Shown: piece by piece, positions 25,688 to 39,630 of the stretch
Layout of the letters: every line of letters starts with the position of its first letter
Position numbering within the stretch: the first letter of the stretch is position 1
Assembly: GCA_965240325.2 (NCBI GenBank)
Contig: OZ251227.1
Coordinates: 1,798,001 to 1,862,000 of the forward strand
DNA: 64,000 nucleotides
Direction: 5' to 3'
DNA from: Rebecca billardiae RCC1528
Taxonomy: Eukaryota; Protista; Haptophyta
Translations under genes and position numbers: made by a program
Notes under the pieces: generated by a model
Database searches by the model: none
What the model saw: the letters and a program-made list of their open reading frames with translations, nothing else
What the model was told of the DNA's origin: nothing

Positions 25688-27020
25688 ATGATGCGCGCGA
25701 TGTCTGCCTCCGCCGTGCGCCGCTCGGTCGCGCGGGGCGCGTCGAGCCTCGGCCTGCGCGCGCGCGCGCTCTCGTCCGTGCCGTCCACCATGAAGGCCGC
25801 CGTCATCCGCGAGACCGGCCCGGCGGAGGTGATGAAGATCGAGACGGACTACCCCGTGCCGTCGCTCAAGGACGGGCAGGTGCTCGTGCGCAACCACTTT
25901 GCGGGCATCAACTTCATCGACACGTACCACCGCAAGGGGATGTACCCGCGCGACCTGCCCTTCGTGGGCGGGCAGGAGGGTGGCGGCGAGATCGCCGCGC
26001 TCACGCCCAAGGCGGAGTCGATGGGCCTGAAGGTGGGCGACCGCGTCGCGTACTCGATCCTGCAGACATACAGCGAGTACTCGGCGGTGCCGGCTGACAA
26101 GGTGCTCAAGGTGCCGGACGGGGTGGGCCTCGACGTCGCCACGGCGTGCGTCGTGCAGGGCCTCACCGCGCACTACCTCACGCACGACGCACACGCGCAG
26201 CTCATCCAGCCGGGCGAGTGGTGCCTCATCCACGGCGTCGGCGGTGGCACGTGCCAGTGGGCCGCGCAGATGGCGCGGCTGCGGGGGTACAAGGTGATCG
26301 GCACGTGCTCGAAGGGGAAGGAGGCCGTCGGCAAGGCGACGGGCTGCCACGAGCTCATCGTCCTCGACGAGGTGCCCGGCAAGAGCTTCGAGGACTACAC
26401 GTCCGTGGACGTCGTGAAGCGCGTGATGGAGATCACCAACGGGCAGGGCGTCAAGGCGGCCATCGATGGCATCGGTGCGAAGCGGGCACACGCGCGCGCC
26501 TGCGCCGGGGGAGGGGCGTTCGCGACTGGGCGCGGCAAGAGGCGCCGGCACGCGGGCTCGGTCGCGTGATCGCATGCACGCAGCGCGCAGACGAGGGCGC
26601 ACCCGCAGCGACCACGTGCGCGCGGCCGCTACATGCGCGCATGGCCATCAGCTGACTGCCAGCGCCCGCGCGTGCACGCGCAACCCTCCGGCAGGCCTCT
26701 CGACGATGGACATCTCCATCGACTCGCTCGCGCGCCGTGGCATCTTCGTCTCGTTCGGCAACGCGTCGGGCGCCGTGCCCGCCTTCCCCGTGCTCCGGCT
26801 CATCGGCAAATCCGCCTTCGTGACTCGTCCGAAGCTGCTCGACTACACCGTCGATCGCGCCGAGCTCGACCGCCGCGCGGGGGACATCTTCGGCTGGCTG
26901 CTCGAGGGCAAGCTGAACGTGGCGATCGACCGCTCGTTCCCTCTGGATGAGGCGGTCGCAGGGCACCTGTACCTCGAGGAGGGCCGCAGCACGGGCAAGG
27001 TCCTGTACAAAATCGACTGA
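25688..27020 (+). CDS. NADPH:quinone oxidoreductase (zeta-crystallin/Qor, MDR family), mitochondrial presequence
   Basis: AGINFIDTYHRKGMYP, GLTAHYL, HGVGGG, SFGNASG, VTRP and STGKVL. Intron at about 26476-26694. Confidence 0.92.
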
Positions 27021-27605
27021 TGAGTCGGGCAGGCCACCGCACCGTCAACATCATTGCCGTGTCGTCAGCAGTTAGTCGGCCGCTGTCAGTGATGTAAGAA
27101 TTGGAGATCTTCAGACAGACAGGCTGGCAGGGAAGTTTCAAGAGGCACGGCCTCGGCCGCAGCGCCTGACGTTTCTAAGCCCTGACTGAAGCAGCGGATT
27201 CGCGCGGTAGTAAGTACACTATACGCCACCGAGTAATAATTAAACAGGTCTACGCAGAGTACCACTACCGGCGCCGCCGGCGACAACCAGTGAGTCCAGT
27301 GACGACTGTCACGTCGACTCGTCGCCGTCTCGCCGACACTCTGAGTCTGACAGTACGACCAGTCGACGATCATAAGCGCCCATTATTAAATATATATATA
27401 TACATATACAAGCGCCTGGCAATTATTGAAGCGGTCCGCGACGGCGAATTCAGCGCGCCCCTCCCCCCCAGACCGGCCAGACCCTGCTGCCGCCGCACCG
27501 GCCAACGCTAGGCCTAGCGTCACAGGTCTGACGCGCAGCGCGGCGGCGCGCCGCGCCACACGGCACACAGCGCGCGGCCCGGCATCGCAGACGAGTCCAC
27601 AACGC

Positions 27606-27772
27606 CAACGGCCAGGGCGACTACTTCCTCAACGGCCAGGGCGACTACTTAGTATTTCCCCCACGGCCAGGACGACTACTTCCTCAACGGCCAGGGCGGC
27701 TACTTTCTCAACGGCAAGAGCAACCCCGCCCGCGCACCGGCCAGGGGCGACTACTTCCCCCACGGCTAGGGA
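27606..27772 (+). repeat. Degenerate ~24-bp minisatellite (CAACGGCCAGGGCGACTACTTCCT), about 6 units
   Basis: Repeated CGGCCAGGGCGACTACTT units are visible. Confidence 0.85.
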
Positions 27773-29490
27773 GTAGGGAGTAGCAGGGTCAGCGCCATCC
27801 CCGACCGCACCGGCTGGCGTGAGCACGGACTACTTCGCACTGCGATTGCATCAACTCGGAGTCTCGGACCGTCAGCCGGGACCGACTCGCCCGGGGACCG
27901 ACGGCAGAAACGGCGTGACGACCAACGACTGCAAGTACTGAACTCTGTGACTAGGGCCTGTTTTATTTCTACCAGATTCCATTTACTATGTCACGGCGAC
28001 AAACCCGTGCTCGCCAGTGGGAATCGGTGTCACGCTCCGTTGGGTGTACCTCTCACGGCCGATGGCGGCCCCCACGTGCGCAAGGAATGCGATTCGTGCA
28101 CTCCTCGGTGACCGGTGAGTGCACGAATCCAGTTGCGGCGCTCGTCCGCCTCGTCGTTGTCGCACACGAGGTACACCCAACACCATGGGTCGGATCCCAG
28201 AACTCTCCGCGCGCTCGCGCCTGCGCGGCACTGGCAGGCTTGTTCTCATCATCTTGGCCAAGACTGCAGCCTGAAAGATGCGCGAGGGCGCGTGTGCACG
28301 CCTTTCCGCGCGTCATGGGTGCGCGTGGCACGCACCTTGTAATATTATACGCCGAGGAGGCCTGAGCATCCGGCCTACTAACCTTCCGCGATCACGTTCA
28401 AATGCAGGCAGCAAGCTGCAAGCAAGCGCACGCCGAACGGAAGCATCTCAAGCTCGACAAGGTAGTGGCGGCGGAGCGTTTAGAGCTGGTGGCGATTGCA
28501 GTCCATCTGGCTGTGAACTGGTCGCTAACTGACACGGGTGCGACGCAGCAGCCAAGGCAGAGTGCTTGCAGCTTGCAGAGGGCCTCCAGCTGCAGCGCCG
28601 GTTTGCCGCCGCTCGCCGCCGCTGCATCGTGCACACTGCCGTGCACCGCGAGTGACCCCTGTGTCAAGGCGAAGCACCACGGCAAGGCGAATCAGCATGT
28701 CTGACAACACCCTTCGCCACAGCGCAGCGCCTCAACACGAGAATGCGCGAATGACGTGCCATCACTTCTCCGGACTAGCTCCGGGGCCCGCACCAGCGGG
28801 CAAGCCGCCATTGTACCGCGTTTTGGCGAATGTCGCCTTTGGGCTCTCGTAGAAATAAAACAGGCCGAAGCGGCATCTCTGGGCACCTGGTTATGGTACT
28901 CCCTCCCTATGATCCGGCATCGGCGACGACTCCCTCACCCGCGGCCAACGCGCTGCTCACATCCTCCGTCTCCAATCAGTTCAGTGAGTTCTTCGACAGA
29001 CGAATCAGGAGAGCTGCGTCCTAGGCTCATGCCTGTGTCTTTAAGTCCTAGAATCAGCACATCAGTCATCATATATATATATATGTCTAGCCGTCCTCGA
29101 AGCGCCTGCGCCATCCAGATGCAGCGAGGAGGCGAGGCACACGCCGGGCAGGGCGGAGCCACGCGGCGAGATACCAGACTTCATACATTGTATCATATGG
29201 GATTTTGGTCCTCGGAAAACAACGTGCGAGCGGCAGCCACTTGAGCCAGCGCTCGGGCCGCGGCCCAGGAGCATCACAGCGAGTAAGTTGTTCGGGGTCG
29301 TTGTGCGAGCGCACAGAGCAGGCTCGAAAGTCCCTCGTGGCACGAGAAGAGGGTGGCCAAGATGGCAGCCGGACTTGAGCTCGGCCGCCTAGCTCGGGCC
29401 GAATGGCAGGCAGGTGTTGATACGGCGCATTGCGCTCCCACCGTCCTCCTAGACAATCAGTTATTGTGCCAATAACCCCACATATATATA

Positions 29491-29493
<3 letters not shown>

Positions 29494-29541
<48 letters not shown>
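29494..29541. repeat. (CA)n microsatellite, followed by a 2x TGTCCCAGGTTGTCC..CATCAAGATA direct repeat (about 29580-29640)
   Basis: Directly visible. Confidence 0.9.
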
Positions 29542-29544
<3 letters not shown>

Positions 29545-29695
29545 TTTTCCATACGTACGATTGAAGAAATTTTTTTTGGTGTCCCAGGTTGTCCCGTCAT
29601 CAAGATATATATAGTGTCCCAGGTTGTCCTCATCAAGATAAATGTTGCTGCTGGTACGCTCACTGCGGCTCACGCTGTCTGCGACTGCGCCAACG

Positions 29696-31234
29696 CTACT
29701 TCGAGCGCCGCGACTGCGACTGCGCCAACGCTACTTCGAGCGCCGCGATGCCGCGCGGAGGAAGCCGCGTGGTCCACTTGGCATCGACGAAGCCGGCCTC
29801 GAGCGCGCGCATGCGCAGCATCCGTGCGCGCATCTCCGCGGTCGGCTTGCTTACGTAGCCCCAGGCGGCCACGCGCTCACCGCCGTCGAGTGGAGCGCTC
29901 GCACGCGTGTGCAGCGTGGTGTGGTTGTTGTACACGACAGCCGAGCCCTCGGGCAGCTCAAAGGGTGCGGCGAGGCCCGGCGCGTGCAGCAGCTTGCACC
30001 ACGCCGCGTAAGCGCGCATGTAGTCGTGATACTCACCGAACGGCAGCTCGGCCATCACGGCGCGCTTGGACTCCGAGTGCATGATCCTGTTAACGGAGCC
30101 ATCCGGGCGCAGCTCGATGATGGGGTGCGTCTGCAGCGCCTCGTACGCGCCCTCGTGGTCGTGATCAAGGTTGCACGGCGCGCCTTCGAGCGTGTAGTGC
30201 ATCGTGCGCACGTTATGCACGATCGGAGTCTTGGTCAGCAGCCGAAATGCGTCGGGCATCGTATCGCGCAGTGCCTCGGCAGCTGTGAGGCCATTGACGA
30301 CGCTCGAGCGCACGGTCCCGCGCGCCTGCAGCAGCCACTGCATGTAGCCCGGCACGCCCGCGTAGAACGAATGGTCCGTGTGGAAGCCCAGAGGATTGCT
30401 CAGGTCGTAGTCTGTGTTGGACACCGCCACCGCCGCGCTCGAGCGGAGAACGCCTGTGCGCGTGCGGCGACGAGGGTGCTCGACCATCCGCCCAATTGTC
30501 GCCCGCACGAGCGCTTCGAGAGGGGCGCCAACTGCACTGTCGTCAGCAAGATCTGCGGCTGTGCCCACGCCGTGCACGATGGCGATGCCTTCTGTCGCCA
30601 CCGTCTCCAGAAGACGCAGCTGTTCATCGGCTCCAGCTGCGCCTGGCGCGATGAGCGCGCTCGCACTAAAGGCGGCGGGCACGTGCTCAGCGGCCCAGCG
30701 TGCGGCAGAGGTGCGCGTGAGTTCGTCGAGCGTGGTGTAAGTGGCGCGGGTACACGAAATGGAGTCCTCGGCACCAGCCTCAGCGCGCACGTCTCCGACC
30801 AGCGGCCCCATCGCGCGCAGCCAATCGGAAGGGAAGGCATGAGCCTCCTCTGACGCAGCAGCGGCGGAGCCATCCGTGTGCGACGCCGGCAGCAGCTCGC
30901 CAGACGCCGGCACGAGGAGGTTGACGCGAAGGGCATCGCCACCCTGTAGGTCATAATCACTGGCGACGGACGCGTCGATCGCCAGCGCATCGAGGCTGCG
31001 CGCAAAGTCACCCGGGTGCTCGCGGCGGAAAGAGCGCGTGCAGATCGCCGGCGACGAATCGCGCAGCCACGCAGAGTGGAACGCGACGCGCAGGCCGTCC
31101 TCCCACGCGACGCAAACGTGCCGGCCAGCGGACTCGACGTGTGCTGACGCAAGAGCGGCGGCACCCCGTGGCGCTTGGGCCGCGCAGTTGGTGGCGAGGG
31201 TCGCGAAGAGGCGCCGTGGAGCGGAGAAGAGCAT
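29696..31234 (-). CDS. Fe(II)/2-oxoglutarate dioxygenase, gamma-butyrobetaine/trimethyllysine hydroxylase (TauD) family, intron-less
   Basis: FHSAWLRD N-domain, LGFHTD (HxD), HPII and YNNHTTLHTR (distal His and Arg). Mitochondrial-like presequence MLFSAPRRLFATL. Confidence 0.88.
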   Translation of the reverse strand: MLFSAPRRLFATLATNCAAQAPRGAAALASAHVESAGRHVCVAWEDGLRVAFHSAWLRDSSPAICTRSFRREHPGDFARSLDALAIDASVASDYDLQGGDALRVNLLVPASGELLPASHTDGSAAAASEEAHAFPSDWLRAMGPLVGDVRAEAGAEDSISCTRATYTTLDELTRTSAARWAAEHVPAAFSASALIAPGAAGADEQLRLLETVATEGIAIVHGVGTAADLADDSAVGAPLEALVRATIGRMVEHPRRRTRTGVLRSSAAVAVSNTDYDLSNPLGFHTDHSFYAGVPGYMQWLLQARGTVRSSVVNGLTAAEALRDTMPDAFRLLTKTPIVHNVRTMHYTLEGAPCNLDHDHEGAYEALQTHPIIELRPDGSVNRIMHSESKRAVMAELPFGEYHDYMRAYAAWCKLLHAPGLAAPFELPEGSAVVYNNHTTLHTRASAPLDGGERVAAWGYVSKPTAEMRARMLRMRALEAGFVDAKWTTRLPPRGIAALEVALAQSQSRRSK

Positions 31235-31439
31235 CTTCTGGCGTGCGAGGGTGTGAAGAGTCGTCCTCGCCGGCGCCCGGCGCGGGGAGCGGATCCCCAA
31301 TCTCGCCTGCCTGAGTTGTGTGCGTCTCTTATTCTTACCGGTAAACTGTATAACCCTCTTGATGATGAACAAGTGTGCACGTTCAATATTAATTTTGCAC
31401 GTTCAATATGAATTTGTCGTCTTGTCGATGTTTAGCTTA

Positions 31440-32037
31440 CAGGTGGATACGGGTGATCTGGACAGTGGCCGACCCAACTCACGCGGAGGCCTCCCTGGGA
31501 GCATTGGGGTCGAAGGGGCGCCAGGGACGGACTTCAGGGGGTCCCTGCCTGGAGTTCCGCCACAGCGCGCTTTCTGCGCTGCGGGCCCGTCTCCGCGCGT
31601 GGCGGCCGCAATGGCACTGTCCAATTAGCCCCTGGCACTGGCTGAGGCATGGGAATCGAGCTCAGAGACGCGCGCGCCGAGGAAAAGCGTGTGCAGCGGC
31701 TCGGACGGTTGCTCTGGGACCTACCCACGCCAGCGCAACCGCGCCTTGCCTCGGAGTCCGCCCTTCCTGAGTCCGCGCACGCGCCTTGCGGCTTGAAACG
31801 CTGGCGTTCGCCCTTGTGCGCGGGACTCACGAAACAAGGCGAAGGCGGCGAGAAGCGCGACCTGGCGCGTGCGCAGACGACGTCTCACGACCAGGTGAGT
31901 TCAGCGAACATCGTGCGCCGTCGTGGCGACCCGCCAGTGGGCGCTCGTGCTCGTTCGCCCACGAGCCCTCGCCACGAGGCCCGCCGCCCGCTGAGTGTCC
32001 AGATAGCCCCTGTGTCCAGTTAGCCCGTATCCACCTG
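31440..32037. mobile_element. MITE-like element, TA-flanked, imperfect ~25 bp TIRs CAGGTGGATACGGG...CTGGACA
   Basis: TA|CAGGTGGATACGGGtgatCTGGACA at the left end and TGTCCAGttagCCCGTATCCACCTG|TA at the right end. No credible ORF. A regulatory reading is given in the findings. Confidence 0.6.
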
Positions 32038-32262
32038 TACAATCAATTCAGCGACTCCCTCGGCCGTACTTATAATTACAATCCAGGTGCATCTAATCTC
32101 CCGTAACGGTCGCGCCCTCGTGCCTGTGTCTTTAAATCATAGAATTGGTCGAGCACCCCTCGCTAGGCGAGGGGTGCTCGACCGTTACGGGAATCCCGCT
32201 GCTCAGGAACCACGTGCTCCGCGGGTCTTGTCACAGCAGACCGTGCGCGGTCCTCGTCGCCA

Positions 32263-33738
32263 ATGAGCAGTCCGTCGGGCATCCGAGTTCGTGCGCGCGT
32301 TCACACCGCCGCGTTCGAAGGGCTCCGCGGTATCGCGGCGCTCCAGGTGAGTCTGGGTCACTTCTGCCAGTTCATGCTCTACCAACCACTCGTGTACTTC
32401 AATGGCACGGCGGCTGTACAGCTCTTTTACGTGCTGGCCGGATTCATGACGTGCCTCGCCAACAACGAGGCGCCCTCGTCGGAAGCGGGGGGCTGCGGTC
32501 CGTTCGCGCGCCGATTCTGGGCTCGCAGGGTCGCCCGTCTTGGCCCCGTCAATTGGCTTTCGATCGTAGTTGGCACGCCGATCGCCGCCCTCCTGCACCC
32601 TCGGCCCCCGTGGCTCGTGCCGCTTAACGTCCTCCTGGACGCACTCTTTGTGCAGGCGTGGGTACCCGTCTTTCATTTGGTCAACGGGCCGCTCTTCTTC
32701 ATGAATGGGCTTGCGCTGTTCTACGGCGTGTTTCCCGCCATCCAGCGCCGCACGCAACAGCCGCGCTCAGCGCAGCGTGTCGTTCAGCTATGCTGGCGGC
32801 TCTGGGTTGCATACGTGGTGCTCTTTGTGCTGATTGCGGCTGCTTTCGAGTGCACCATCTCGCCTACCCCGGGCAGTTTGCCGTCGCAGACGCCGACCAC
32901 CGCCGAGATCCTGCATCACGCGCGGCAGATGGCCCACAAGCACCCGTTGAGTAAGCTCCCCTTGTGCTTGATTGGCGCAGTGGTCGGCAGCTATGCAATG
33001 GCCCCCGCTGCCGACACCGCTGCAGGTGCCGAGGGCAGCTCTATCGCTGCGACGAAACCCGCAGCGTCCTTGCGCTGGGGCGGTGTTGCGAATGGCTGCG
33101 CTTTGGCTTACGCACTCTTCACGCTCGCCTTCCTCTGCGTGCCGCTGATCGCCTTCCAGACTTGTGGGTACGAATACGCCTGGATTGCTGAGGATGCCTT
33201 CGCATACACAGCTGATCTGCTGCCTGGGCCGGCGTTCGCGCTGTGGCTTTACGCCCTGACGCAGGCGCCCGGCTGCGCAGCGGAGCGCTTCTTATCGAAT
33301 GCGCTCCTCCAGTGGATTGGCAAGATCTCCTACTCATGGTACTGCATACATTTTCCCCTTTTCTACATCTGCGCATGGCTGAGGGGGCTGGCGCGCGCAC
33401 CTGATGACGGGATCGCTCCCCGCTATGCCGCCGGCTGGTCTGGATCCCCGCTGCTGCAATGGTGGGAGATTGTGCCCGTCATGGCCGTGGTGGCGATGGT
33501 GAGTGCTGCTGTCCATCGCTGGGTCGAAGAGCCCGCGCGGCGGATCATCTACCGTCTCGTCGACGGCACTCCTGCAACGGCCGCAACCCCCGACGATTCG
33601 ATGGCGACACGGCGTCCCTGGCGCGGCGATGATGGATCTGATGCTGGGACCGGTATCGAACGCCGGTCGCTGCAGACTATGCCTGGTAGTTCTCTGATGA
33701 CGTCGAATACGCCGAAGACGACGATGCCATTGGTCTGA
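32263..33738 (+). CDS. Acyltransferase-3 (OafA/YrhL-like) multi-pass membrane acyltransferase, intron-less
   Basis: FEGLRGIAALQVSLGH, AVQLFYVLAGF, FWARRVARL, WIGKISYSWYCIHFP and HRWVEEP. Confidence 0.9.
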   Translation: MSSPSGIRVRARVHTAAFEGLRGIAALQVSLGHFCQFMLYQPLVYFNGTAAVQLFYVLAGFMTCLANNEAPSSEAGGCGPFARRFWARRVARLGPVNWLSIVVGTPIAALLHPRPPWLVPLNVLLDALFVQAWVPVFHLVNGPLFFMNGLALFYGVFPAIQRRTQQPRSAQRVVQLCWRLWVAYVVLFVLIAAAFECTISPTPGSLPSQTPTTAEILHHARQMAHKHPLSKLPLCLIGAVVGSYAMAPAADTAAGAEGSSIAATKPAASLRWGGVANGCALAYALFTLAFLCVPLIAFQTCGYEYAWIAEDAFAYTADLLPGPAFALWLYALTQAPGCAAERFLSNALLQWIGKISYSWYCIHFPLFYICAWLRGLARAPDDGIAPRYAAGWSGSPLLQWWEIVPVMAVVAMVSAAVHRWVEEPARRIIYRLVDGTPATAATPDDSMATRRPWRGDDGSDAGTGIERRSLQTMPGSSLMTSNTPKTTMPLV

Positions 33739-33752
33739 CGACGCGACAATAA

Positions 33753-33755
<3 letters not shown>

Positions 33756-33785
<30 letters not shown>

Positions 33786-33837
33786 GCCTCATGGCCCGCG
33801 GTGCTATCTAGTATCTATCTATCTATCTATCAGTATC

Positions 33838-33885
<48 letters not shown>

Positions 33886-33908
33886 GATAGATAGATGATA
33901 GATAGATA
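33756..33908. repeat. (CAT)n plus (TATC)n/(GATA)n microsatellites between convergent genes
   Basis: Directly visible. The TATC and GATA blocks are reverse complements. Confidence 0.93.
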
Positions 33909-33984
33909 TTTACATGTGTACAATATGTGTACAGTACGTACGGTATCATACGTACGTGCACGTTGACGTGTCGCCGATCAATGA

Positions 33985-34716
33985 TTAGATGAAGCCACGC
34001 ACCAGGTAGAGTGCGCACGCGGCGATCTCGCGCACAAAATCGTGCACAGACGGACCGATATCCACCATCGCAGTGTTCGCCACGTCATCAGCATGAGCAG
34101 CAGTGGTGCCATCAGCTGCGCAGGGGACCACGAATGTACAGCCCGTCACGCCCAGGTCATGCGCGGCTTTGCGGAACGTGCGCAACGAGCGCCACTCGTG
34201 GAAGGTTGAGGTGACGAGTGCGACGGTGCCAGATGATCGGGGCGAGGCGGCACACGCGAGCATAGGGATCGTCAGCATGGCGTTTAGCCGGGTGGAGGTC
34301 GACGCGCGCTCCACGCGCAGCGTCGGCTTTCCCGTGGGCTTGAGTACGCGATACAGGAACGCGGCCATCACGTCCGCCTCTGTCGGCAGGTTGGCACGGA
34401 CGCGCCAGCCAGTGCCCCCAGAGCAGAAGATCGTTGGCCGTGGATGCGTGAAGGACCACAGATCGGCGGCGCGCTCGAGGCGGCTCTGGAGCGTACGTGA
34501 GGGGGTGCCACGCTGATGGTCGACGGCGTAGCCGAGAACGACGATCTCTCTGGGCCTATATGCGGGCGTGAGCCTTTCACATGCTGACAGCACGTGCGCC
34601 ATGCGCTGTGGTAGCTGCAGGTAGCCGACGCGCATGGCGAGCGCGAATGCGAGCGCCATCCCCATCAGCCCGGTCGTTGTGCAGCATGCTAATGCGAGCC
34701 GTACAAGGCGCGTCAT
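33985..34716 (-). CDS. DUF218 (YdcF/SanA/ElyC-like) protein with N-terminal TM, intron-less
   Basis: IVVLG, SRLERA, SGG, TEADVM, ERASTSTRLNA, LVTSTFHEWRS and VREIAA. Confidence 0.88.
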   Translation of the reverse strand: MTRLVRLALACCTTTGLMGMALAFALAMRVGYLQLPQRMAHVLSACERLTPAYRPREIVVLGYAVDHQRGTPSRTLQSRLERAADLWSFTHPRPTIFCSGGTGWRVRANLPTEADVMAAFLYRVLKPTGKPTLRVERASTSTRLNAMLTIPMLACAASPRSSGTVALVTSTFHEWRSLRTFRKAAHDLGVTGCTFVVPCAADGTTAAHADDVANTAMVDIGPSVHDFVREIAACALYLVRGFI

Positions 34717-34744
34717 GCCGTCGCGCTGCGCTGCAACGGCCTCA

Positions 34745-34844
34745 TTGCCCGTATCCACCTGTACGCCGTTACGCGCACGTGCCCGACGTTATTCATCAAT
34801 GCGTTCACGAATCACGTTCACGTTGTACAGGTGGATACGGGCAA
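34745..34844. repeat. Perfect 20-bp inverted repeat TTGCCCGTATCCACCTGTAC / GTACAGGTGGATACGGGCAA with 60-bp spacer
   Basis: Copies at 34745-34764 and 34825-34844, with the same core as the ends at 31438 and 32039. Confidence 0.92.
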
Positions 34845-35970
34845 GGGCGGTAAGGGCTGTCAACTCCCAGTGGCGCCGAGTGGCGGAGGTTGGTTGCCCC
34901 TCAACTCGTGCGGCCTCGCGGCGCAGCGGCTAAGTCTCCTGGGGCGCCGCCCAGGAGGGCGCGTGGGGTGCGCACGCCGCGTGCTCCTGCGGCCGCGGCA
35001 GCGGCCGCGGACACGGCGCGCGTGGTTGGTCGCATGCTAGACAGTATGTAGTACCCTCCCACGCCGCGCGCCGTGCTCGCCGGTGCCCTCGCCGTGCCTC
35101 AGGCCAGCCGCGCACGCGCGCCGCACCAATGGCCAGCCGTGGCCACGCGCCAGCCGCCGGCGCGCGCGCGGTGCGCGGTGCGGTCGGCGCGGGTCGGGCG
35201 CGCGCCCGGGGCGAGGCTTGTGTATGATGGGCGCGCGTCATGCCGCCTCGCGCCGCCGCGCTGGAGCCCGCATGGGTCGGCGCGCACGCGTTCTCATGCT
35301 GTCGAGTGTGCATTGCCATGTTTGAAAATGCTCATGTTGAGACGATCATGGGAAGGCAGCGACGCGTGATAGACAAGCGCAGACCACTGATATGAGCACG
35401 ACTAGCATCATACTATGGCACGCGAGCCCCCAAGTGCTCGCGTTCCTCGCACTGATGCGCTCACAGCCGCTTGTCCAAGCTCATTTCTGATGGCCGAGGA
35501 ATGCTCGACGAGCACCCTTCAGCAGCCGCGTGGAACGTGATCAAGCTCGTGTGCGGCGGCGCGAGGCGGCATGACGCGCGCCCATCATACACAAGCCTCG
35601 CCCCGGGCGCGCGCCCGACCCGCGCCGACCGCACCGCGCACCGCGCGCGCGCCGGCGGCTGGCGCGTGGCCACGGCTGGCCATTGGTGCGGCGCGCGTGC
35701 GCGGCTGGCCTGAGGCACGGCGAGGGCACCGGCGAGCACGGCGCGCGGCGTGGGAGGGTACTACATACTGTCTAGCATGCGACCAACCACGCGCGCCGTG
35801 TCCGCGGCCGCTGCCGCGGCCGCAGGAGCACGCGGCGTGCGCACCCCACGCGCCCTCCTGGGCGGCGCCCCAGGAGACTTAGCCGCTGCGCCGCGAGGCC
35901 GCACGAGTTGAGGGGCAACCAACCTCCGCCACTCGGCGCCACTGGGAGTTGACAGCCCTTACCGCCCTTG
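34842..35970. repeat. Long inverted repeat IR2: arms 34842-35259 and 35553-35970 (418 bp), 293 bp spacer
   Basis: The arms appear to be exact reverse complements. Identical mirrored ORF translations appear in the track. Confidence 0.95.
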
Positions 35971-36125
35971 GTGAAGTCGTGCCTTTGTTCTCGTGGGTTT
36001 CCAGAATATATATAATAATAGTGCTCGGCGGTGACCTCCGCCGCCGGCGATCCCGCCGGAATCCCAGTAGTGGGGACGACGTACGACGATAGGGCTCCTG
36101 AATTTTCGTCGTGCGCGGTGGTGGG

Positions 36126-37109
36126 ATGATCTCTCGACGCACGGCTCGAGCGTGCACCCGAATCCTTCCCGTGACGGCTCGTTGGCTCTCAGCCGACGCG
36201 GTGCGTGGAGCAGCCCCCTGCCGCTGGGCACGCACGCCGACGGATGACGGCACGCCCATCGCTGAGCACGTGAGCAAAGTCATCGATGAGTATGACCCAC
36301 CGCACGCGCGCAAATACTACCAGCACGTCCTTGGTGGGGGCGGGCATGGGATTCGCTACGGCATCTTTCGTTCTGCGGCAGACACCGCTCACCAGACCTC
36401 TCTGGAGACCAGCTCCAGGCTCATCACCAGCCTCGACTGGATCCGTCCGGTGACGCCAGGCTCGATGGTGCTCGACCTGGGCTCGGGCCACGGGGGCATC
36501 AGTCACGAGCTGGCGCGGCGCTTCGGATGTTCTGTGCACGGACTCAACCTGTCGGAGAATCAGAACGAAGTGAACCTTGCTGAGGCTGCGCGCCTTGGCA
36601 TTGCGGACAAGGTCCACGTGGTTTGCCACGATTTCAACAACCCGCTCCCTCCAGACTACGACGGGACGTTCACACACATCATCTCGTGCGACGCCATGTT
36701 CCATGCCTACTCCAAGCAGCGCCTCGTGGCCGAGCTCTATCGCGTGCTTGCTCCCGGAGGTGCCATCGCGTTCACCGACATGTGCCGCTCTGAAACTGCT
36801 TCCAGTGATGTGCTCGAGGTGTACACGGCGAAAACCCCGGCAGGCAAGATGACCTCTGTGTCGGAGTACACGTCCATCATGCAAAGCGCTGGCTTTCGCC
36901 ATCCTTCCTTCGTGGACTTCTCCGCGCACCTTGTGCCGTGCTTTCAGCAGATGCTCGACGCGACGCGCTCGAAGCGAGAGCTCCTTCTCGCCGAGGGTTG
37001 CCCCGCAGACTACCTTGACAAGTGGGAGTGGTCACTCGACAAGCGCATCCGTGACCAGCTCGACCATGAGATGTTGGTGTGGGGCATCTTCTCTGCCCGC
37101 AAGTTCTGA
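36126..37109 (+). CDS. Class I SAM methyltransferase, sarcosine/dimethylglycine-MT / DsyG-DSYE-like, intron-less
   Basis: VLDLGSGHGG, YRVLAPGG.IAFTD, N-terminal EYD..HARKYY..VLGGGG.GIRYGIF and C-terminal WGIFSARK. Arg-rich presequence. Confidence 0.85.
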   Translation: MISRRTARACTRILPVTARWLSADAVRGAAPCRWARTPTDDGTPIAEHVSKVIDEYDPPHARKYYQHVLGGGGHGIRYGIFRSAADTAHQTSLETSSRLITSLDWIRPVTPGSMVLDLGSGHGGISHELARRFGCSVHGLNLSENQNEVNLAEAARLGIADKVHVVCHDFNNPLPPDYDGTFTHIISCDAMFHAYSKQRLVAELYRVLAPGGAIAFTDMCRSETASSDVLEVYTAKTPAGKMTSVSEYTSIMQSAGFRHPSFVDFSAHLVPCFQQMLDATRSKRELLLAEGCPADYLDKWEWSLDKRIRDQLDHEMLVWGIFSARKF

Positions 37110-39630
37110 TGAGGTTGGGTCGCTGCCACTCCTGGCTGACATACCGCCATCTGATGAATCCGAAATTGGTCACACCGTCCAAGCGGGAGTCCCTGAGCCG
37201 CTTAGCTGCTGCGCCGCCGGCCGCCATCCCGGGCCCCGACGGGCCAGTGACTTAGACTTAGTCCAATTTCGTAGCCGGCAAGTGAGCCGGACGGCCCGGG
37301 TGGCCCGCGGCGGCGCCGCTGGCCCGCCCCGGCCGGCTGCCAGGCGGCCAGGCGGCTGGATTCCCCCGCGGCCCCCGGCCGCTCGGCCAAGCGTGCGTTG
37401 TGGCGCGTACGTGCGACGGAGAGCGCTGGTGCGGGCTGGCAGCGGCGCGCTGGCACGCCACGTGCCTGTAGTCCGTAGTCGTGCTACGCCGTTCCGTGCT
37501 CAATGAGCTCAATCCTGCAACCGCGACGGCAGGCCGCGGTGGCGCGGCGTCCGCGCCGCTCCCGGCCCGGTTGCGGGCTTGGTCAGCCCAATGGTTGGCC
37601 GCGCCGACACGAGTCACGCGCGGTGTGCTCGGCGCGATGGCCCCCGCTTAGGCGGATATGGCATGAGATGGCGGATGGGTGATGATGAAGAGACTAACTA
37701 CTGCTATGGAGGCCAGTCATTGCGCCGCAGGCGCGCTCTGCAGAGCAGTCTGTCTGGGACCACTTCCTGCACTGCGACGGCCTCGGCCCGGGCCCGTGGC
37801 GCGCGCCTGCCGAAGCGCACCCAATCGGGGCCTGCTCAATCAATCGGGGTGCGAGCACAGCCCGCGAGCCCCCTCCCCCCCCCCCTCCCCGGCCCCCTGC
37901 TGCCCATCAGCCCTTCGAGCACGGGGTGCAGTGCCTCCCGCCCCCACATAAGGACATGGCCATGGGGGGGGGGGGGGTATACTGACAGTTATCGGGACGG
38001 TCGGTAACCCTGCCAAGCTGTGTCCTTCCAAAGGACCTTTGGTCCTTCGGCTTCAGTGGGGCCTGAACGGATATCCCCCTGCAACAGATACGGGACTCAG
38101 TCGGCTATGCCATAGGACAAGATCACCAGAGCGCCAGCGCCTCAGTTCTGCGCGTACGATCATCGGTGTGGCTATATCGTACACACAACTCAACCGGCTA
38201 TTGATTGACACACACCGTCTCCGCCTGCCGCCACTGCTACAGCGATCGGGCGCGCGCGCGCGTACGCGCGCGCGCGCGCGCTCGGTTGTGGCGGACAACC
38301 GACGTCCAGGGACGGCCCCACAACCAGCACATGACAGCGTCAGTTGCTCGCCCCTGGCAGCCGAGCGGCGACCCTGGGCACGGACAGCGCAGGCGAGTGC
38401 TCGCGCCGGATGCCCGCGCCGCCGCCCGCACCGCCGCCCACGCCGCCACGGGCGCGTTGCTGCCCGTAGCACACCGATTCTGGGGCGGGGCGAAGAGAGG
38501 GCAACCGCCATCGTGCTGGGTAGGACGGAAACGAGCCTCCCGGACTCCCCCCGCCGCTGGGAGGCCGTGTTTCGATCCGCTGCGGTGCTGAGGTTGGAAG
38601 CGCCCGGCGTCTCGAAGGCGCCCACCTCGCGACCCTCCCCAACCGACCCCCGCCGCCCGCGGGCGGGCTGCTGGGCGCACGAGCGCGAGCTGGCCGCCGG
38701 CGTGAAGCCGAGGTGGAGCCAACTCGCCCTTCAGCTCGCAGGACGCCCGGCTCCTGAAGCCGACCGCCCGGTGTGCGCGCATCCGCCTGCCTGCTTTGGC
38801 GCGGAGGCAAAACCGTACGGCCCATCGGCCGCCGCCGCCACGCGGCAGCCAGTCGGGGTGTCGTGTCGCGATTTGCGGGTGCGCGCCTCGCGGGGCAGGT
38901 GGCACTGTCCCGCCCGGTCGCTTCCGATCAACGAAATTCCCTCGCAAGCGCCCGCGAACGCTGATCCTCGCCGCGGGCTCGCCGGGGCCCGCATGTGCGC
39001 ACCCGGGTGCCCCAGTCGAGCCAGTCTGGTGCGAGCATCGAACGACGGTACGGGCCGGGCGGCGTGGTGCGCGACGTCACCGAGACTGCGGGCCAGCTAG
39101 GCACCGCTTGCGCGCCCACCAGCAGCCTGTGGGCCGACCACGCGTTCAACCGTGCACCCGATGGCAGTCACGGTGCTCTTCGGCTGGAGCGCGCCGTGCG
39201 CTCAGACGCGAGCGGCCGCCAAGTTGCCGGGTAGACGCGGTGCGCACGCTCTAGCAGCTGCGGATCAGCATCGCGCGAAGCTCTGCTGCCCCCACCTGAA
39301 TGCTCGCAGCACCCACCACACGGCCAGCCGGCCGCGCGCGGCGCGCGGCCACCTCACCGGGTCTGCCGCGCACCCACCACACCGCCAAGTTGTCGGGGGG
39401 GGGGGTGTCCGGGGCTTAGGTCCGGGTCTGCAGACTGTGTTGCTGTTGTCGCTGATAGTCCGTGAGTCCGTGACCAAGGTTGGCGCAGGACTCTTCCTTT
39501 CCCCGTTGACCCCGCATGACCACCGGATCCACGTTCGGCTCGGTGCGCCAAGATGCACCAGCCACGCGCGAATGGCCTGGTGCGATGCGCGGCGCGGCCA
39601 GGAGTGGGTATCCGCCACCCGGGGCTTGGG

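What the first reader, a model, noticed from the sequence alone, without database searches (positions are those of the whole stretch)
31438..34841. A 16-bp word (CCCGTATCCACCTGTA) occurs once upstream of each of the four island genes, always on the sense strand
Seen: exact copies at 31438-31453, 32024-32039, 34748-34763 and 34826-34841, and I found no other exact copy in the window. On each gene's coding strand it lies about 204 bp before the dioxygenase ATG, 224 bp before the acyltransferase and 110 bp before DUF218. It would lie about 234 bp before the methyltransferase if the 1129-bp IR2 is removed. It contains an E-box (CACCTG). Inference: three readings are possible. It may be a cluster-specific co-regulatory element, the TA|CAGG terminus of a Tc1/pogo-like family whose ends assembled the cluster (31440 and 34761 would bracket acyltransferase plus DUF218 as cargo), or a cassette recombination site. 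These readings are not mutually exclusive.
Basis: partly seen in the sequence, partly recalled or inferred. Interest (0 to 1): 0.8.

Follow-up and report, generated by a model that had tools for sequence, protein, structure and literature searches.

The report
Ends of a pogo-like MITE
The 16-base word is the end of a small jumping-DNA family, with about 144 copies of the word across this alga-like genome, so it is ordinary transposon debris in two gene-flanking spacers and not a switch private to the four-gene island.

Summary
The window holds four exact copies at the stated positions, and none is expected by chance.

The word is not specific to the island. The 72-Mb genome holds 144 copies (at most one mismatch), and nearly all sit in inverted pairs 582 bp apart. 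These pairs are the TA-flanked terminal inverted repeats of a roughly 598-bp MITE whose copies average 98.9% pairwise identity.

- **31438-32039** is one intact copy.
- **34748-34763 and 34826-34841** are two 16-bp end stubs lying back to back, 62 bp apart. The right stub is cut off by a second transposon (IR2: about 1130 bp, 426-bp arms, 7-bp target duplications, at least 40 copies). IR2 sits at a site that IR2-type elements also hit in MITE ends elsewhere.

A 3974-bp element elsewhere in the genome has the same ends. It encodes a divergent pogo/DDE_1-like transposase with a Mos1-like predicted fold, and it is the likely parent.

"One sense-strand copy upstream of each gene" follows from geometry. 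Two inverted pairs sit in two spacers between divergently transcribed genes.

- **Transposon-terminus reading:** supported.
- **Cluster-specific regulator:** not supported.
- **Cassette site:** not supported.
- **Ends carried in acyltransferase plus DUF218 as cargo:** no positive evidence, but not excluded.

The case is ordinary and of low interest.

The parts
31438..32039 (.). Intact copy of the ~598-bp MITE (602 bp here, counting the TA at each end). It lies in the spacer between the dioxygenase (-) and the acyltransferase (+).
   Evidence: full-length matches at 98-99% identity to 39 other genome places; it differs from the consensus of the 14 compared copies by one 4-bp insertion and 2 substitutions. 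(I4): 27-nt imperfect inverted termini.
31438..31453 (-). 16-mer copy 1: TA plus the first 14 nt of the MITE's left inverted repeat.
32024..32039 (+). 16-mer copy 2: the last 14 nt of the MITE's right inverted repeat plus TA.
34748..34763 (+). Solo end stub (a right-end type terminus whose element body would lie to the left). Only 16 bp remain. It lies 31 bp from the DUF218 ATG. The inner flank reads CATTG.
   Evidence: the junction is one mismatch away from the IR2-end+stub junction CCTTG+stub; no MITE-like sequence inside it.
34764..34825 (.). 62-bp unique spacer between the two outward-facing stubs (55% GC).
   Evidence: no other copy in the genome or in the fetched loci. GC content.
34826..34841 (-). 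Solo end stub (a left-end type terminus whose body would lie to the right). It is truncated after 16 bp by the IR2 insertion.
34842..35970 (.). IR2: a copy of an unrelated transposon family of about 1130 bp (426-bp inverted arms, 277-bp loop, termini CAAGGG...CCCTTG). This copy lacks the family's 7-bp target duplication (ATACGGG on the left, GTGAAGT on the right).
   Evidence: I1; at least 40 full-length genome copies at 91-100% identity; 14 of 17 inspected copies have perfect 7-bp duplications.
29696..31234 (-). TauD/BBOX-type dioxygenase gene.
   Evidence: PF02668, E 1.2e-16.
32263..33738 (+). Acyltransferase-3 gene. A 97.8%-identical paralogous segment lies about 80 kb downstream on the same contig.
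33751..33752 (.). A TA that is unoccupied here. In the acyltransferase paralog the same TA is followed directly by the end of the long pogo-like element, which gives a one-junction empty site.
33985..34716 (-). DUF218 gene.
   Evidence: PF02698, E 3.1e-18.
36126..37109 (+). SAM-dependent methyltransferase gene. Transcript-like public contigs start at 35983, 13 nt from the IR2 end.

Best explanation
The 16-mer is the TA target dinucleotide plus the outermost 14 nt (CAGGTGGATACGGG) of the terminal inverted repeat of a non-autonomous cut-and-paste transposon (MITE) of about 598 bp. The MITE belongs to the Tc1/mariner superfamily on its pogo-like side. About 70 elements are spread over the 72-Mb genome and are nearly identical to each other, so the family amplified recently. 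Its likely source of transposase is a 3974-bp element on another contig. That element has the same termini and encodes a divergent DDE_1-type enzyme.

The family inserts at TA in locally AT-richer patches, which in this 68-70% GC genome are mostly the short spacers next to genes. One intact copy landed between the dioxygenase and the acyltransferase.

Inferred step: two more copies landed 62 bp apart between DUF218 and the methyltransferase, and both were later reduced to 16-bp stubs. The right stub was made when an IR2-type transposon inserted into the 7-bp site ATACGGG inside the repeat, a site that IR2-type elements also hit elsewhere. The DNA beyond IR2 was then lost, which is why IR2 has no target duplication here. 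The left stub ends at exactly the same base and probably had the same history, but this is not shown.

Each spacer lies between divergent genes and holds one inverted pair, so every gene has a sense-strand copy upstream without any selection for that arrangement.
For: - **Copy number and pairing:** one search gives 144 hits (71 forward, 73 reverse; reversed-pattern control 0). Among the first 100 listed places, 45 conventional (-,+) pairs account for 90 hits. Of these pairs, 29 are spaced exactly 582 bp and 7 more are spaced 572-589 bp.
- **Flanks:** one search shows all 14 elements flanked by TA on both sides with otherwise unrelated flanks.
- **Homogeneity:** one search gives 40 scored full-length copies at 98-99% identity. 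One search gives a mean pairwise identity of 98.9%, with several copies identical.
- **Target dinucleotide:** the paralog junction shows the element end abutting a TA that is present and unoccupied in the window.
- **Insertion sites:** one search gives flank GC of 51-57% within 50 bp, against 67% farther out.
- **Parent element:** searches show the 3974-bp element with identical 16-bp ends, and the MITE shares only about 46-61 bp with each of its ends.
- **Transposase:** one search shows a coding-like GC pattern for its 554-aa ORF. One search places it nearest to DDE_1 clusters. Searches find 161 relatives, and among the ten scanned, three pass the PF03184 cut-off. One search shows invariant D241, D364 and D410. 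Searches give Mos1, SETMAR and Sleeping Beauty transposases as best fold matches (E 3e-5).
- **IR2 as a separate transposon:**
- **IR2-type insertions in MITE ends elsewhere:** (L067 at the same site with duplication CCCGTAT; L068 4 bp further in with duplication GTTAGCC).
- **Subterminal motif:** one search finds TGTCCAG near both MITE ends, as in the Lemi1/Emigrant system (PMC1636448).
Against: - The transposase ORF itself gives no Pfam hit even at E 10, and the word-index search found nothing. Its family assignment is therefore transitive and structural.
- The spacing between the second and third invariant aspartates is 45 residues, outside the 30-35 reported for pogo groups (PMC7325037).
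- The structure model is only moderate (mean pLDDT 65), and whole-chain TM-scores are low.
- No complete empty site with both junctions was found for any copy. TA as a duplication rests on one junction plus the invariant TA.
- The history of the two stubs is inferred. No reciprocal junctions were found. Two independent insertions 62 bp apart, both cut at the same base, is a coincidence that requires the hot-spot argument.
- A regulatory effect of the inserted DNA on the neighbouring genes was not tested and is not excluded.
Confidence: 0.9

Rival explanations
1. Cluster-specific co-regulatory element: the 16-mer (with its CACCTG E-box) is a binding site that co-ordinates expression of the four island genes.
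For: There are four exact copies within 3.4 kb. Each gene has one sense-strand copy 110-234 bp before its ATG. MITEs are known in plants to carry transcription-factor sites (PMC5950925, title and abstract seen).
Against: The genome holds 144 copies, almost all of them as ends of dispersed MITEs. All four window copies are element termini. The sense-strand pattern is forced by two inverted pairs lying in two divergent spacers. The methyltransferase's sense copy lies about 1.2 kb from the likely transcript start at 35983. No conservation data exist.
Confidence: 0.03
2. Cargo or composite transposon: the left end at 31438 and the right-end stub at 34763 acted together and moved a 3326-bp unit (MITE + acyltransferase + DUF218) into a former dioxygenase-methyltransferase spacer. 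Transposon ends would then have assembled the island.
For: The two ends are in the correct relative orientation and each is followed by TA. An 18-nt direct repeat brackets the two genes (D12). Earlier scan notes report MITE-bounded composite Tc1/mariner elements in this genome. The acyltransferase paralog also ends exactly at a pogo-like element end.
Against: DUF218 and the spacer are single-copy. The paralog holds only the acyltransferase and is not bracketed in the same way. The right end is a bare 16-bp stub without the subterminal motif. The composites noted earlier have two complete modules in direct orientation, and the window does not. No related genome was available to show an empty site.
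Confidence: 0.07
3. Cassette recombination site: the word is an attC-like or recombinase target at which gene cassettes were joined.
For: The word sits at the borders of gene-sized segments.
Against: Genome-wide, the word bounds a 598-bp non-coding element and not genes. The orientations alternate, which fits inverted termini. The enzyme associated with these ends is a DDE-type transposase.
Confidence: 0.01

Closest known systems
Emigrant MITE with its pogo-like partner Lemi1 (Arabidopsis; PMC1636448)
   Same: A short, homogeneous non-coding element shares its inverted termini with a rare longer element that encodes a pogo-type transposase. Repeated subterminal motifs sit next to the termini (TGTCCAG here).
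   Different: The host lineage differs (a GC-rich alga-like genome). The terminal sequence is unrelated. The transposase is so divergent that Pfam DDE_1 does not score it directly. Binding and mobility are untested here.
Stowaway-type / Tc1-mariner MITEs with TA target duplication (ITm superfamily; PMC7325037)
   Same: TA flanks, short inverted termini, cut-and-paste DDD-type enzyme, and best fold matches to Mos1, SETMAR and Sleeping Beauty.
   Different: There are 45 residues between the second and third invariant aspartates, not the 30-35 (pogo) or 34 (mariner/Tc1) reported. No Transposase_1 hit in the genome (that search's controls were silent, so it is uninformative).
Reversed Ac/fractured-Ac termini in maize (PMC3744419)
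   Same: Two element ends lie close together and face away from each other, and each belongs to a broken element.
   Different: A different superfamily (hAT). Here both elements are reduced to 16 bp and only 62 bp separate them. No rearrangement produced by them is shown.
MITE-bounded composite Tc1/mariner elements noted earlier in this same genome (scan notes)
   Same: The same genome, TA-flanked ends, and MITE-like modules associated with larger units.
   Different: Those have two complete ~780-810-bp modules in direct orientation around a transposase and satellite. The window has one 598-bp MITE plus two inside-out 16-bp stubs. Those elements' sequences were not compared here.

Membership tests
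Tc1/mariner-superfamily MITE (pogo-like branch) | TA target-site duplication | tested here: met
   TA lies on both sides of 14 of 14 elements, with otherwise unrelated flanks. At the acyltransferase paralog the element end follows a TA that is present and unoccupied in the window. No two-junction empty site was found.
Tc1/mariner-superfamily MITE (pogo-like branch) | Terminal inverted repeats | tested here: met
   16 nt are perfect and 27 nt are 89% complementary (I4). The termini are identical in all inspected copies.
Tc1/mariner-superfamily MITE (pogo-like branch) | Small, non-coding, many near-identical copies | tested here: met
   About 598 bp. 144 end hits. 40 scored full-length copies at 98-99% identity. 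Mean pairwise identity 98.9%. No Rfam family in the region.
Tc1/mariner-superfamily MITE (pogo-like branch) | A longer element with the same ends that encodes the transposase | tested here: met
   L061 (3974 bp) has identical 16-bp ends, and the MITE shares only about 46-61 bp with each of its ends (87-91% for the window copy; 92-94% for the closest MITE subfamily). Its 554-aa ORF has a coding-like GC pattern and a Mos1-like predicted fold.
pogo family (Pfam DDE_1, PF03184) | The protein scores as DDE_1 | tested here: inconclusive
   The ORF itself has no Pfam hit even at E 10. Its relatives P0002, P0004 and P0012 (E 1e-61 to 1e-24 to the ORF) pass the PF03184 cut-off. The nearest Atlas feature clusters are all DDE_1.
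pogo family (Pfam DDE_1, PF03184) | DDxD triad with about 30-35 residues between the second and third D (PMC7325037) | tested here: inconclusive
   D241, D364 and D410 are invariant in 16 sequences, but the spacing is 45 residues.
Cluster-specific cis-regulatory motif | Occurrence restricted to, or strongly enriched at, the co-regulated genes | tested here: not met
   144 copies are spread over many contigs as MITE ends.
Cluster-specific cis-regulatory motif | Bound by a host factor, and needed for expression | not testable with these tools
   Needs EMSA or DAP-seq and promoter mutagenesis.
Composite / cargo-carrying transposon (31438-34763) | Evidence that the unit moved: a second copy or an empty site | tested here: not met
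   DUF218 and the spacer are single-copy. The paralog covers only 32175-33751. No close relative was available.
Composite / cargo-carrying transposon (31438-34763) | Two ends in proper orientation with TA | tested here: met
   The right end is only 16 bp and lacks the subterminal motif.
Integron-like cassette site | Sites in one orientation at cassette borders, with an associated site-specific recombinase | tested here: not met
   The orientations alternate as inverted termini. The associated enzyme is a DDE-type transposase. No search for recombinase genes was made.

The most novel reading that the evidence does not exclude
Pogo-like element ends did more than land here. The left end at 31438 and the stub at 34763 (or aberrant events at the back-to-back stubs) brought the acyltransferase-DUF218 pair in between the dioxygenase and the methyltransferase. 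On this reading a candidate biosynthetic island of a eukaryotic alga was assembled by DNA-transposon ends, and the retained transposase-binding termini may now act as shared promoter elements.
Probability: 0.06. Interest if true: 0.6.

Novelty: new member of a known kind. Interest (0 to 1): 0.17.

Why it matters
The result removes a tempting false lead. The repeated word gives no evidence that the four genes are co-regulated or form a functional cluster.

It also gives a clean description of a young MITE family and its likely, very divergent pogo-like parent in a GC-rich alga-like genome. This is useful for repeat annotation.

It shows that both spacers of the island are mosaics of transposon pieces. 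The proximal promoter regions of DUF218 and the methyltransferase consist largely of transposon DNA. That matters for anyone who wants to study how these genes are expressed.

Tried and rejected
- **The genome's only DDE_3 hit as the parent.** The Tc1/IS630-type element at C31:420119 has unrelated 246-bp inverted ends beginning TA-CTACTCG and no copy of the word.
- **Mariner Transposase_1 search.** No hit, but the controls were silent too, so the result is uninformative.
- **Homologues of the L061 ORF.** The word-index protein search was blank. The PDB profile search gave nothing useful.
- **Recombination between IR2 copies as the cause of the missing IR2 target duplication.** No reciprocal junction of either kind exists in the genome.
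- **The extra hit of CCTTG+stub at C5:2166730.** It has no MITE or IR2 sequence around it and lacks the TA. It remains unexplained.
- **Empty sites among all fetched loci.** None found.
- **Presence/absence in other assemblies or relatives.** Exact-protein look-ups for dioxygenase, acyltransferase and DUF218 found nothing. An acyltransferase homologue search was blank at E 1e-20. Methyltransferase relatives are at most 51% identical, and the two long contigs show no shared neighbours.
- **The 62-bp spacer as part of any repeat.** It is not.
- **Inversion or inverted-duplication models for the back-to-back stubs.** The matching arms extend only 20 nt (I5/I10). No single inversion of a normal element reproduces the observed order, so I left the origin open.
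- **Rfam scan of 27000-38000.** Nothing found.
Full report
**Observation.** The word CCCGTATCCACCTGTA occurs exactly four times in the window: 31438-31453 (-), 32024-32039 (+), 34748-34763 (+) and 34826-34841 (-). No further copy appears even at 2 mismatches, and none is expected in shuffled sequence.

- a TauD-type dioxygenase (minus strand, ATG 31234);
- an acyltransferase-3 (32263-33738);
- a DUF218 protein (minus strand, ATG 34716);
- a SAM methyltransferase (36126-37109).

The stated distances to the start codons hold.

**What the word is.** The window is C10:1798001-1862000 of a 72-Mb, 41-contig genome with about 68% GC. Earlier scan notes call it a GC-rich alga; I did not verify the taxon.

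The genome holds 144 copies of the word at one mismatch or fewer (71 forward, 73 reverse), while the reversed-pattern control gives 0. Of the first 100 places listed, 90 form 45 pairs in the order minus-then-plus. Of these pairs, 29 have a start-to-start spacing of exactly 582 bp and 7 more fall between 572 and 589 bp.

Fourteen extracted elements all begin TA-CAGGTGGATACGGG and end CCCGTATCCACCTG-TA, and their flanks are unrelated to each other. Forty scored places match the window's 31438-32039 over its full length at 98-99% identity. Mean pairwise identity among the 14 is 98.9%, and several are identical.

The element is about 598 bp. It has 27-nt imperfect inverted termini (I4) and carries a subterminal motif, TGTCCAG, once near one end and twice near the other. 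This is a classical MITE that amplified recently. The window's first two copies of the word are simply the two ends of one intact member.

**TA as target.** The acyltransferase has a 97.8%-identical paralogous segment about 80 kb away (C10:1910758-1912342, equal to window 32175-33751). In the paralog the sequence ...GCGACAA-TA is followed directly by CAGGTGGATACGGG and an element interior. In the window the same TA is followed by unrelated native sequence.

This is a one-junction empty site, and it shows that the TA belongs to the target. I found no two-junction empty site.

**Parent element.** One pair of the word is 3958 bp apart (C5:2742558-2746531, locus L061). The window MITE matches L061 only over about 46-61 bp at each end, at 87-91%. 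The closest MITE subfamily matches the first 49 and last 59 bp at 92-94%. L061's interior is essentially single-copy.

L061 holds a 554-aa ORF with a gene-like GC1/GC2/GC3 pattern of 0.64/0.48/0.83. The evidence on this ORF is as follows:
- Pfam does not score it even at E 10, and the word-index search is blank.
- The Atlas feature search places it among DDE_1 clusters at 0.93.
- An exhaustive phmmer search finds 161 relatives. Among the ten relatives scanned, three pass the PF03184 DDE_1 cut-off.
- A 16-sequence alignment has invariant D241-E242, D364 and D410.
- An AlphaFold model (mean pLDDT 65) matches the Mos1, SETMAR and Sleeping Beauty transposases best (E 3e-5).

I therefore read L061 as a divergent pogo-like member of the Tc1/mariner superfamily and the probable source of transposase for the MITE. 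Two caveats apply: the aspartate spacing is 45 residues, and the Pfam link is only transitive. The closest described system is Lemi1/Emigrant of Arabidopsis (PMC1636448). The family framework is that of PMC7325037.

**The second pair.** The copies at 34748 (+) and 34826 (-) are in the opposite order to every other listed pair. They are two element ends facing away from each other across a unique 62-bp spacer, and each is only 16 bp long.

Directly after the right stub begins 'IR2' (34842-35970). IR2 is an independent transposon family:
- at least 40 full-length copies at 91-100% identity;
- 426-bp inverted arms (I1);
- termini CAAGGG...CCCTTG;
- perfect 7-bp target duplications in 14 of 17 inspected copies.

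The window copy has ATACGGG on its left and GTGAAGT on its right. It has no duplication, so DNA next to its right end was lost after insertion.

IR2-type elements have also entered MITE ends elsewhere:
- In L067 a 75%-related subfamily sits at exactly the same base, with duplication CCCGTAT.
- In L068 another sits 4 bp further in, with duplication GTTAGCC.

Three hits in the terminal 20 bp of about 70 small elements is far more than random insertion would give. My rough estimate of the expectation is about 0.01.

The left stub ends at the same base, and its inner flank CATTG differs by one base from the IR2 terminus CCTTG. My preferred history, which is inferred, runs as follows. Two MITE insertions landed 62 bp apart. 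Each was hit by an IR2-type element at this hot spot. Deletions then removed the MITE bodies on both sides and the IR2 copy on the left.

I could not find reciprocal junctions, and no simple inversion model fits. I put this step at about even odds.

**Why the pattern looks regulatory.** Both spacers lie between divergently transcribed genes, and each holds one inverted pair of the word. Each gene must therefore see one sense copy.

The family inserts in locally AT-richer DNA. Flanks are 51-57% GC within 50 bp, against 67% farther away. In this genome such DNA is mainly the short spacers beside genes.

Two public contigs that look like transcript assemblies (ERR14847148 and ERR14847151, both 100% identical to the window) start at 35983. 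The methyltransferase's sense copy is therefore about 1.2 kb from the likely transcript start. That these contigs are transcripts is my inference. It rests on their shared 5' end, their differing 3' ends, and their stopping 13 nt short of IR2 and not running about 30 nt into the repeat.

**Rivals.**
- **Cargo reading (31438 to 34763 moving acyltransferase plus DUF218).** It is geometrically possible. Earlier notes of MITE-bounded composites in this genome raise its prior. However, the unit is single-copy, its right end is a bare stub, the paralog holds only the acyltransferase, and no related genome was available. I give it 0.07.
- **Cassette-site reading.** It has no support, and I give it 0.01.

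A generic, not cluster-specific, influence of the inserted DNA on neighbouring promoters remains possible and was not tested.

**Verdict.** This is a real feature that is correctly described but over-interpreted. It is a new member of a known kind (a pogo-like MITE family and its parent), and its interest is low. The side observations are worth a note but do not change the verdict. They are the IR2 hot spot in the MITE end, the back-to-back stubs, and the transposon-built promoters.

Noticed in passing
window 34842-35970 (IR2), and loci L031-L050: IR2 is a transposon family of about 1130 bp with 426-bp inverted arms, termini CAAGGG...CCCTTG and 7-bp target duplications (perfect in 14 of 17 copies). 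The genome holds at least 40 copies. Its superfamily is not identified. The window copy lacks its duplication.
   Followed up: partly
window 34835-34842; L067:1107-1120 and 2216-2230; L068:1075-1085 and 2205-2215: Three independent IR2-family insertions fall within the terminal 20 bp of the pogo-like MITE, and two of them are at exactly the same base. This looks like one transposon family preferentially targeting the end of another.
   Followed up: partly
window 35983-37564 (L081, L082): Two public Logan contigs from different runs match the methyltransferase locus at 100%. Both begin at 35983, 13 nt from the IR2 end. If they are transcripts, the core promoter of the methyltransferase lies inside IR2.
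   Followed up: partly
window 31298-31337: A 40-bp stretch ending ...GTGTGCGTCTCTTATTCTTA lies 64-100 bp upstream of the dioxygenase ATG. It is the end of a very abundant repeat: the 22-mer has 1252 genome hits at one mismatch or fewer, mostly solitary. A truncated copy with a T-run sits inside a MITE in L067, which hints at a retroposon.
   Followed up: partly
window 32098-32192 and 29026-29054: A small palindromic element (ends CCCGTAACGGTCG / CGACCGTTACGGG) lies just upstream of the acyltransferase, next to the left limit (32175) of homology with the paralog. Part of it recurs at 29026-29054 and in other loci.
   Followed up: no
G000:C10:1910758-1912931 (L076, L077): A second acyltransferase copy (97% protein identity) ends 13 nt after its stop codon at the end of a broken long pogo-like element. 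Homology with the window does not resume within 10 kb. This is another rearrangement breakpoint that coincides with an end of this family.
   Followed up: partly
G000:C5:2166730-2166748 (L080): An exact 19-nt match to the IR2-end+stub junction (CCTTG plus 14 nt of the repeat, without TA) sits in otherwise unique sequence with no MITE or IR2 around it. At about 5e-4 expected, it is too long for chance. It is unexplained.
   Followed up: partly
G000:C31:416910-421309 (L078:911-5309): A 4.4-kb TA-flanked element with perfect 246-bp inverted ends encodes a 460-aa DDE_3/HTH transposase. It is the only DDE_3 hit in the genome and is unrelated to the 16-mer family.
   Followed up: partly
G000:C22:457936-458042 and 477695-477801 (L072, L073): Two identical 107-bp internally deleted derivatives of the MITE, with identical flanks, lie 20 kb apart. 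They mark a recent segmental duplication.
   Followed up: no
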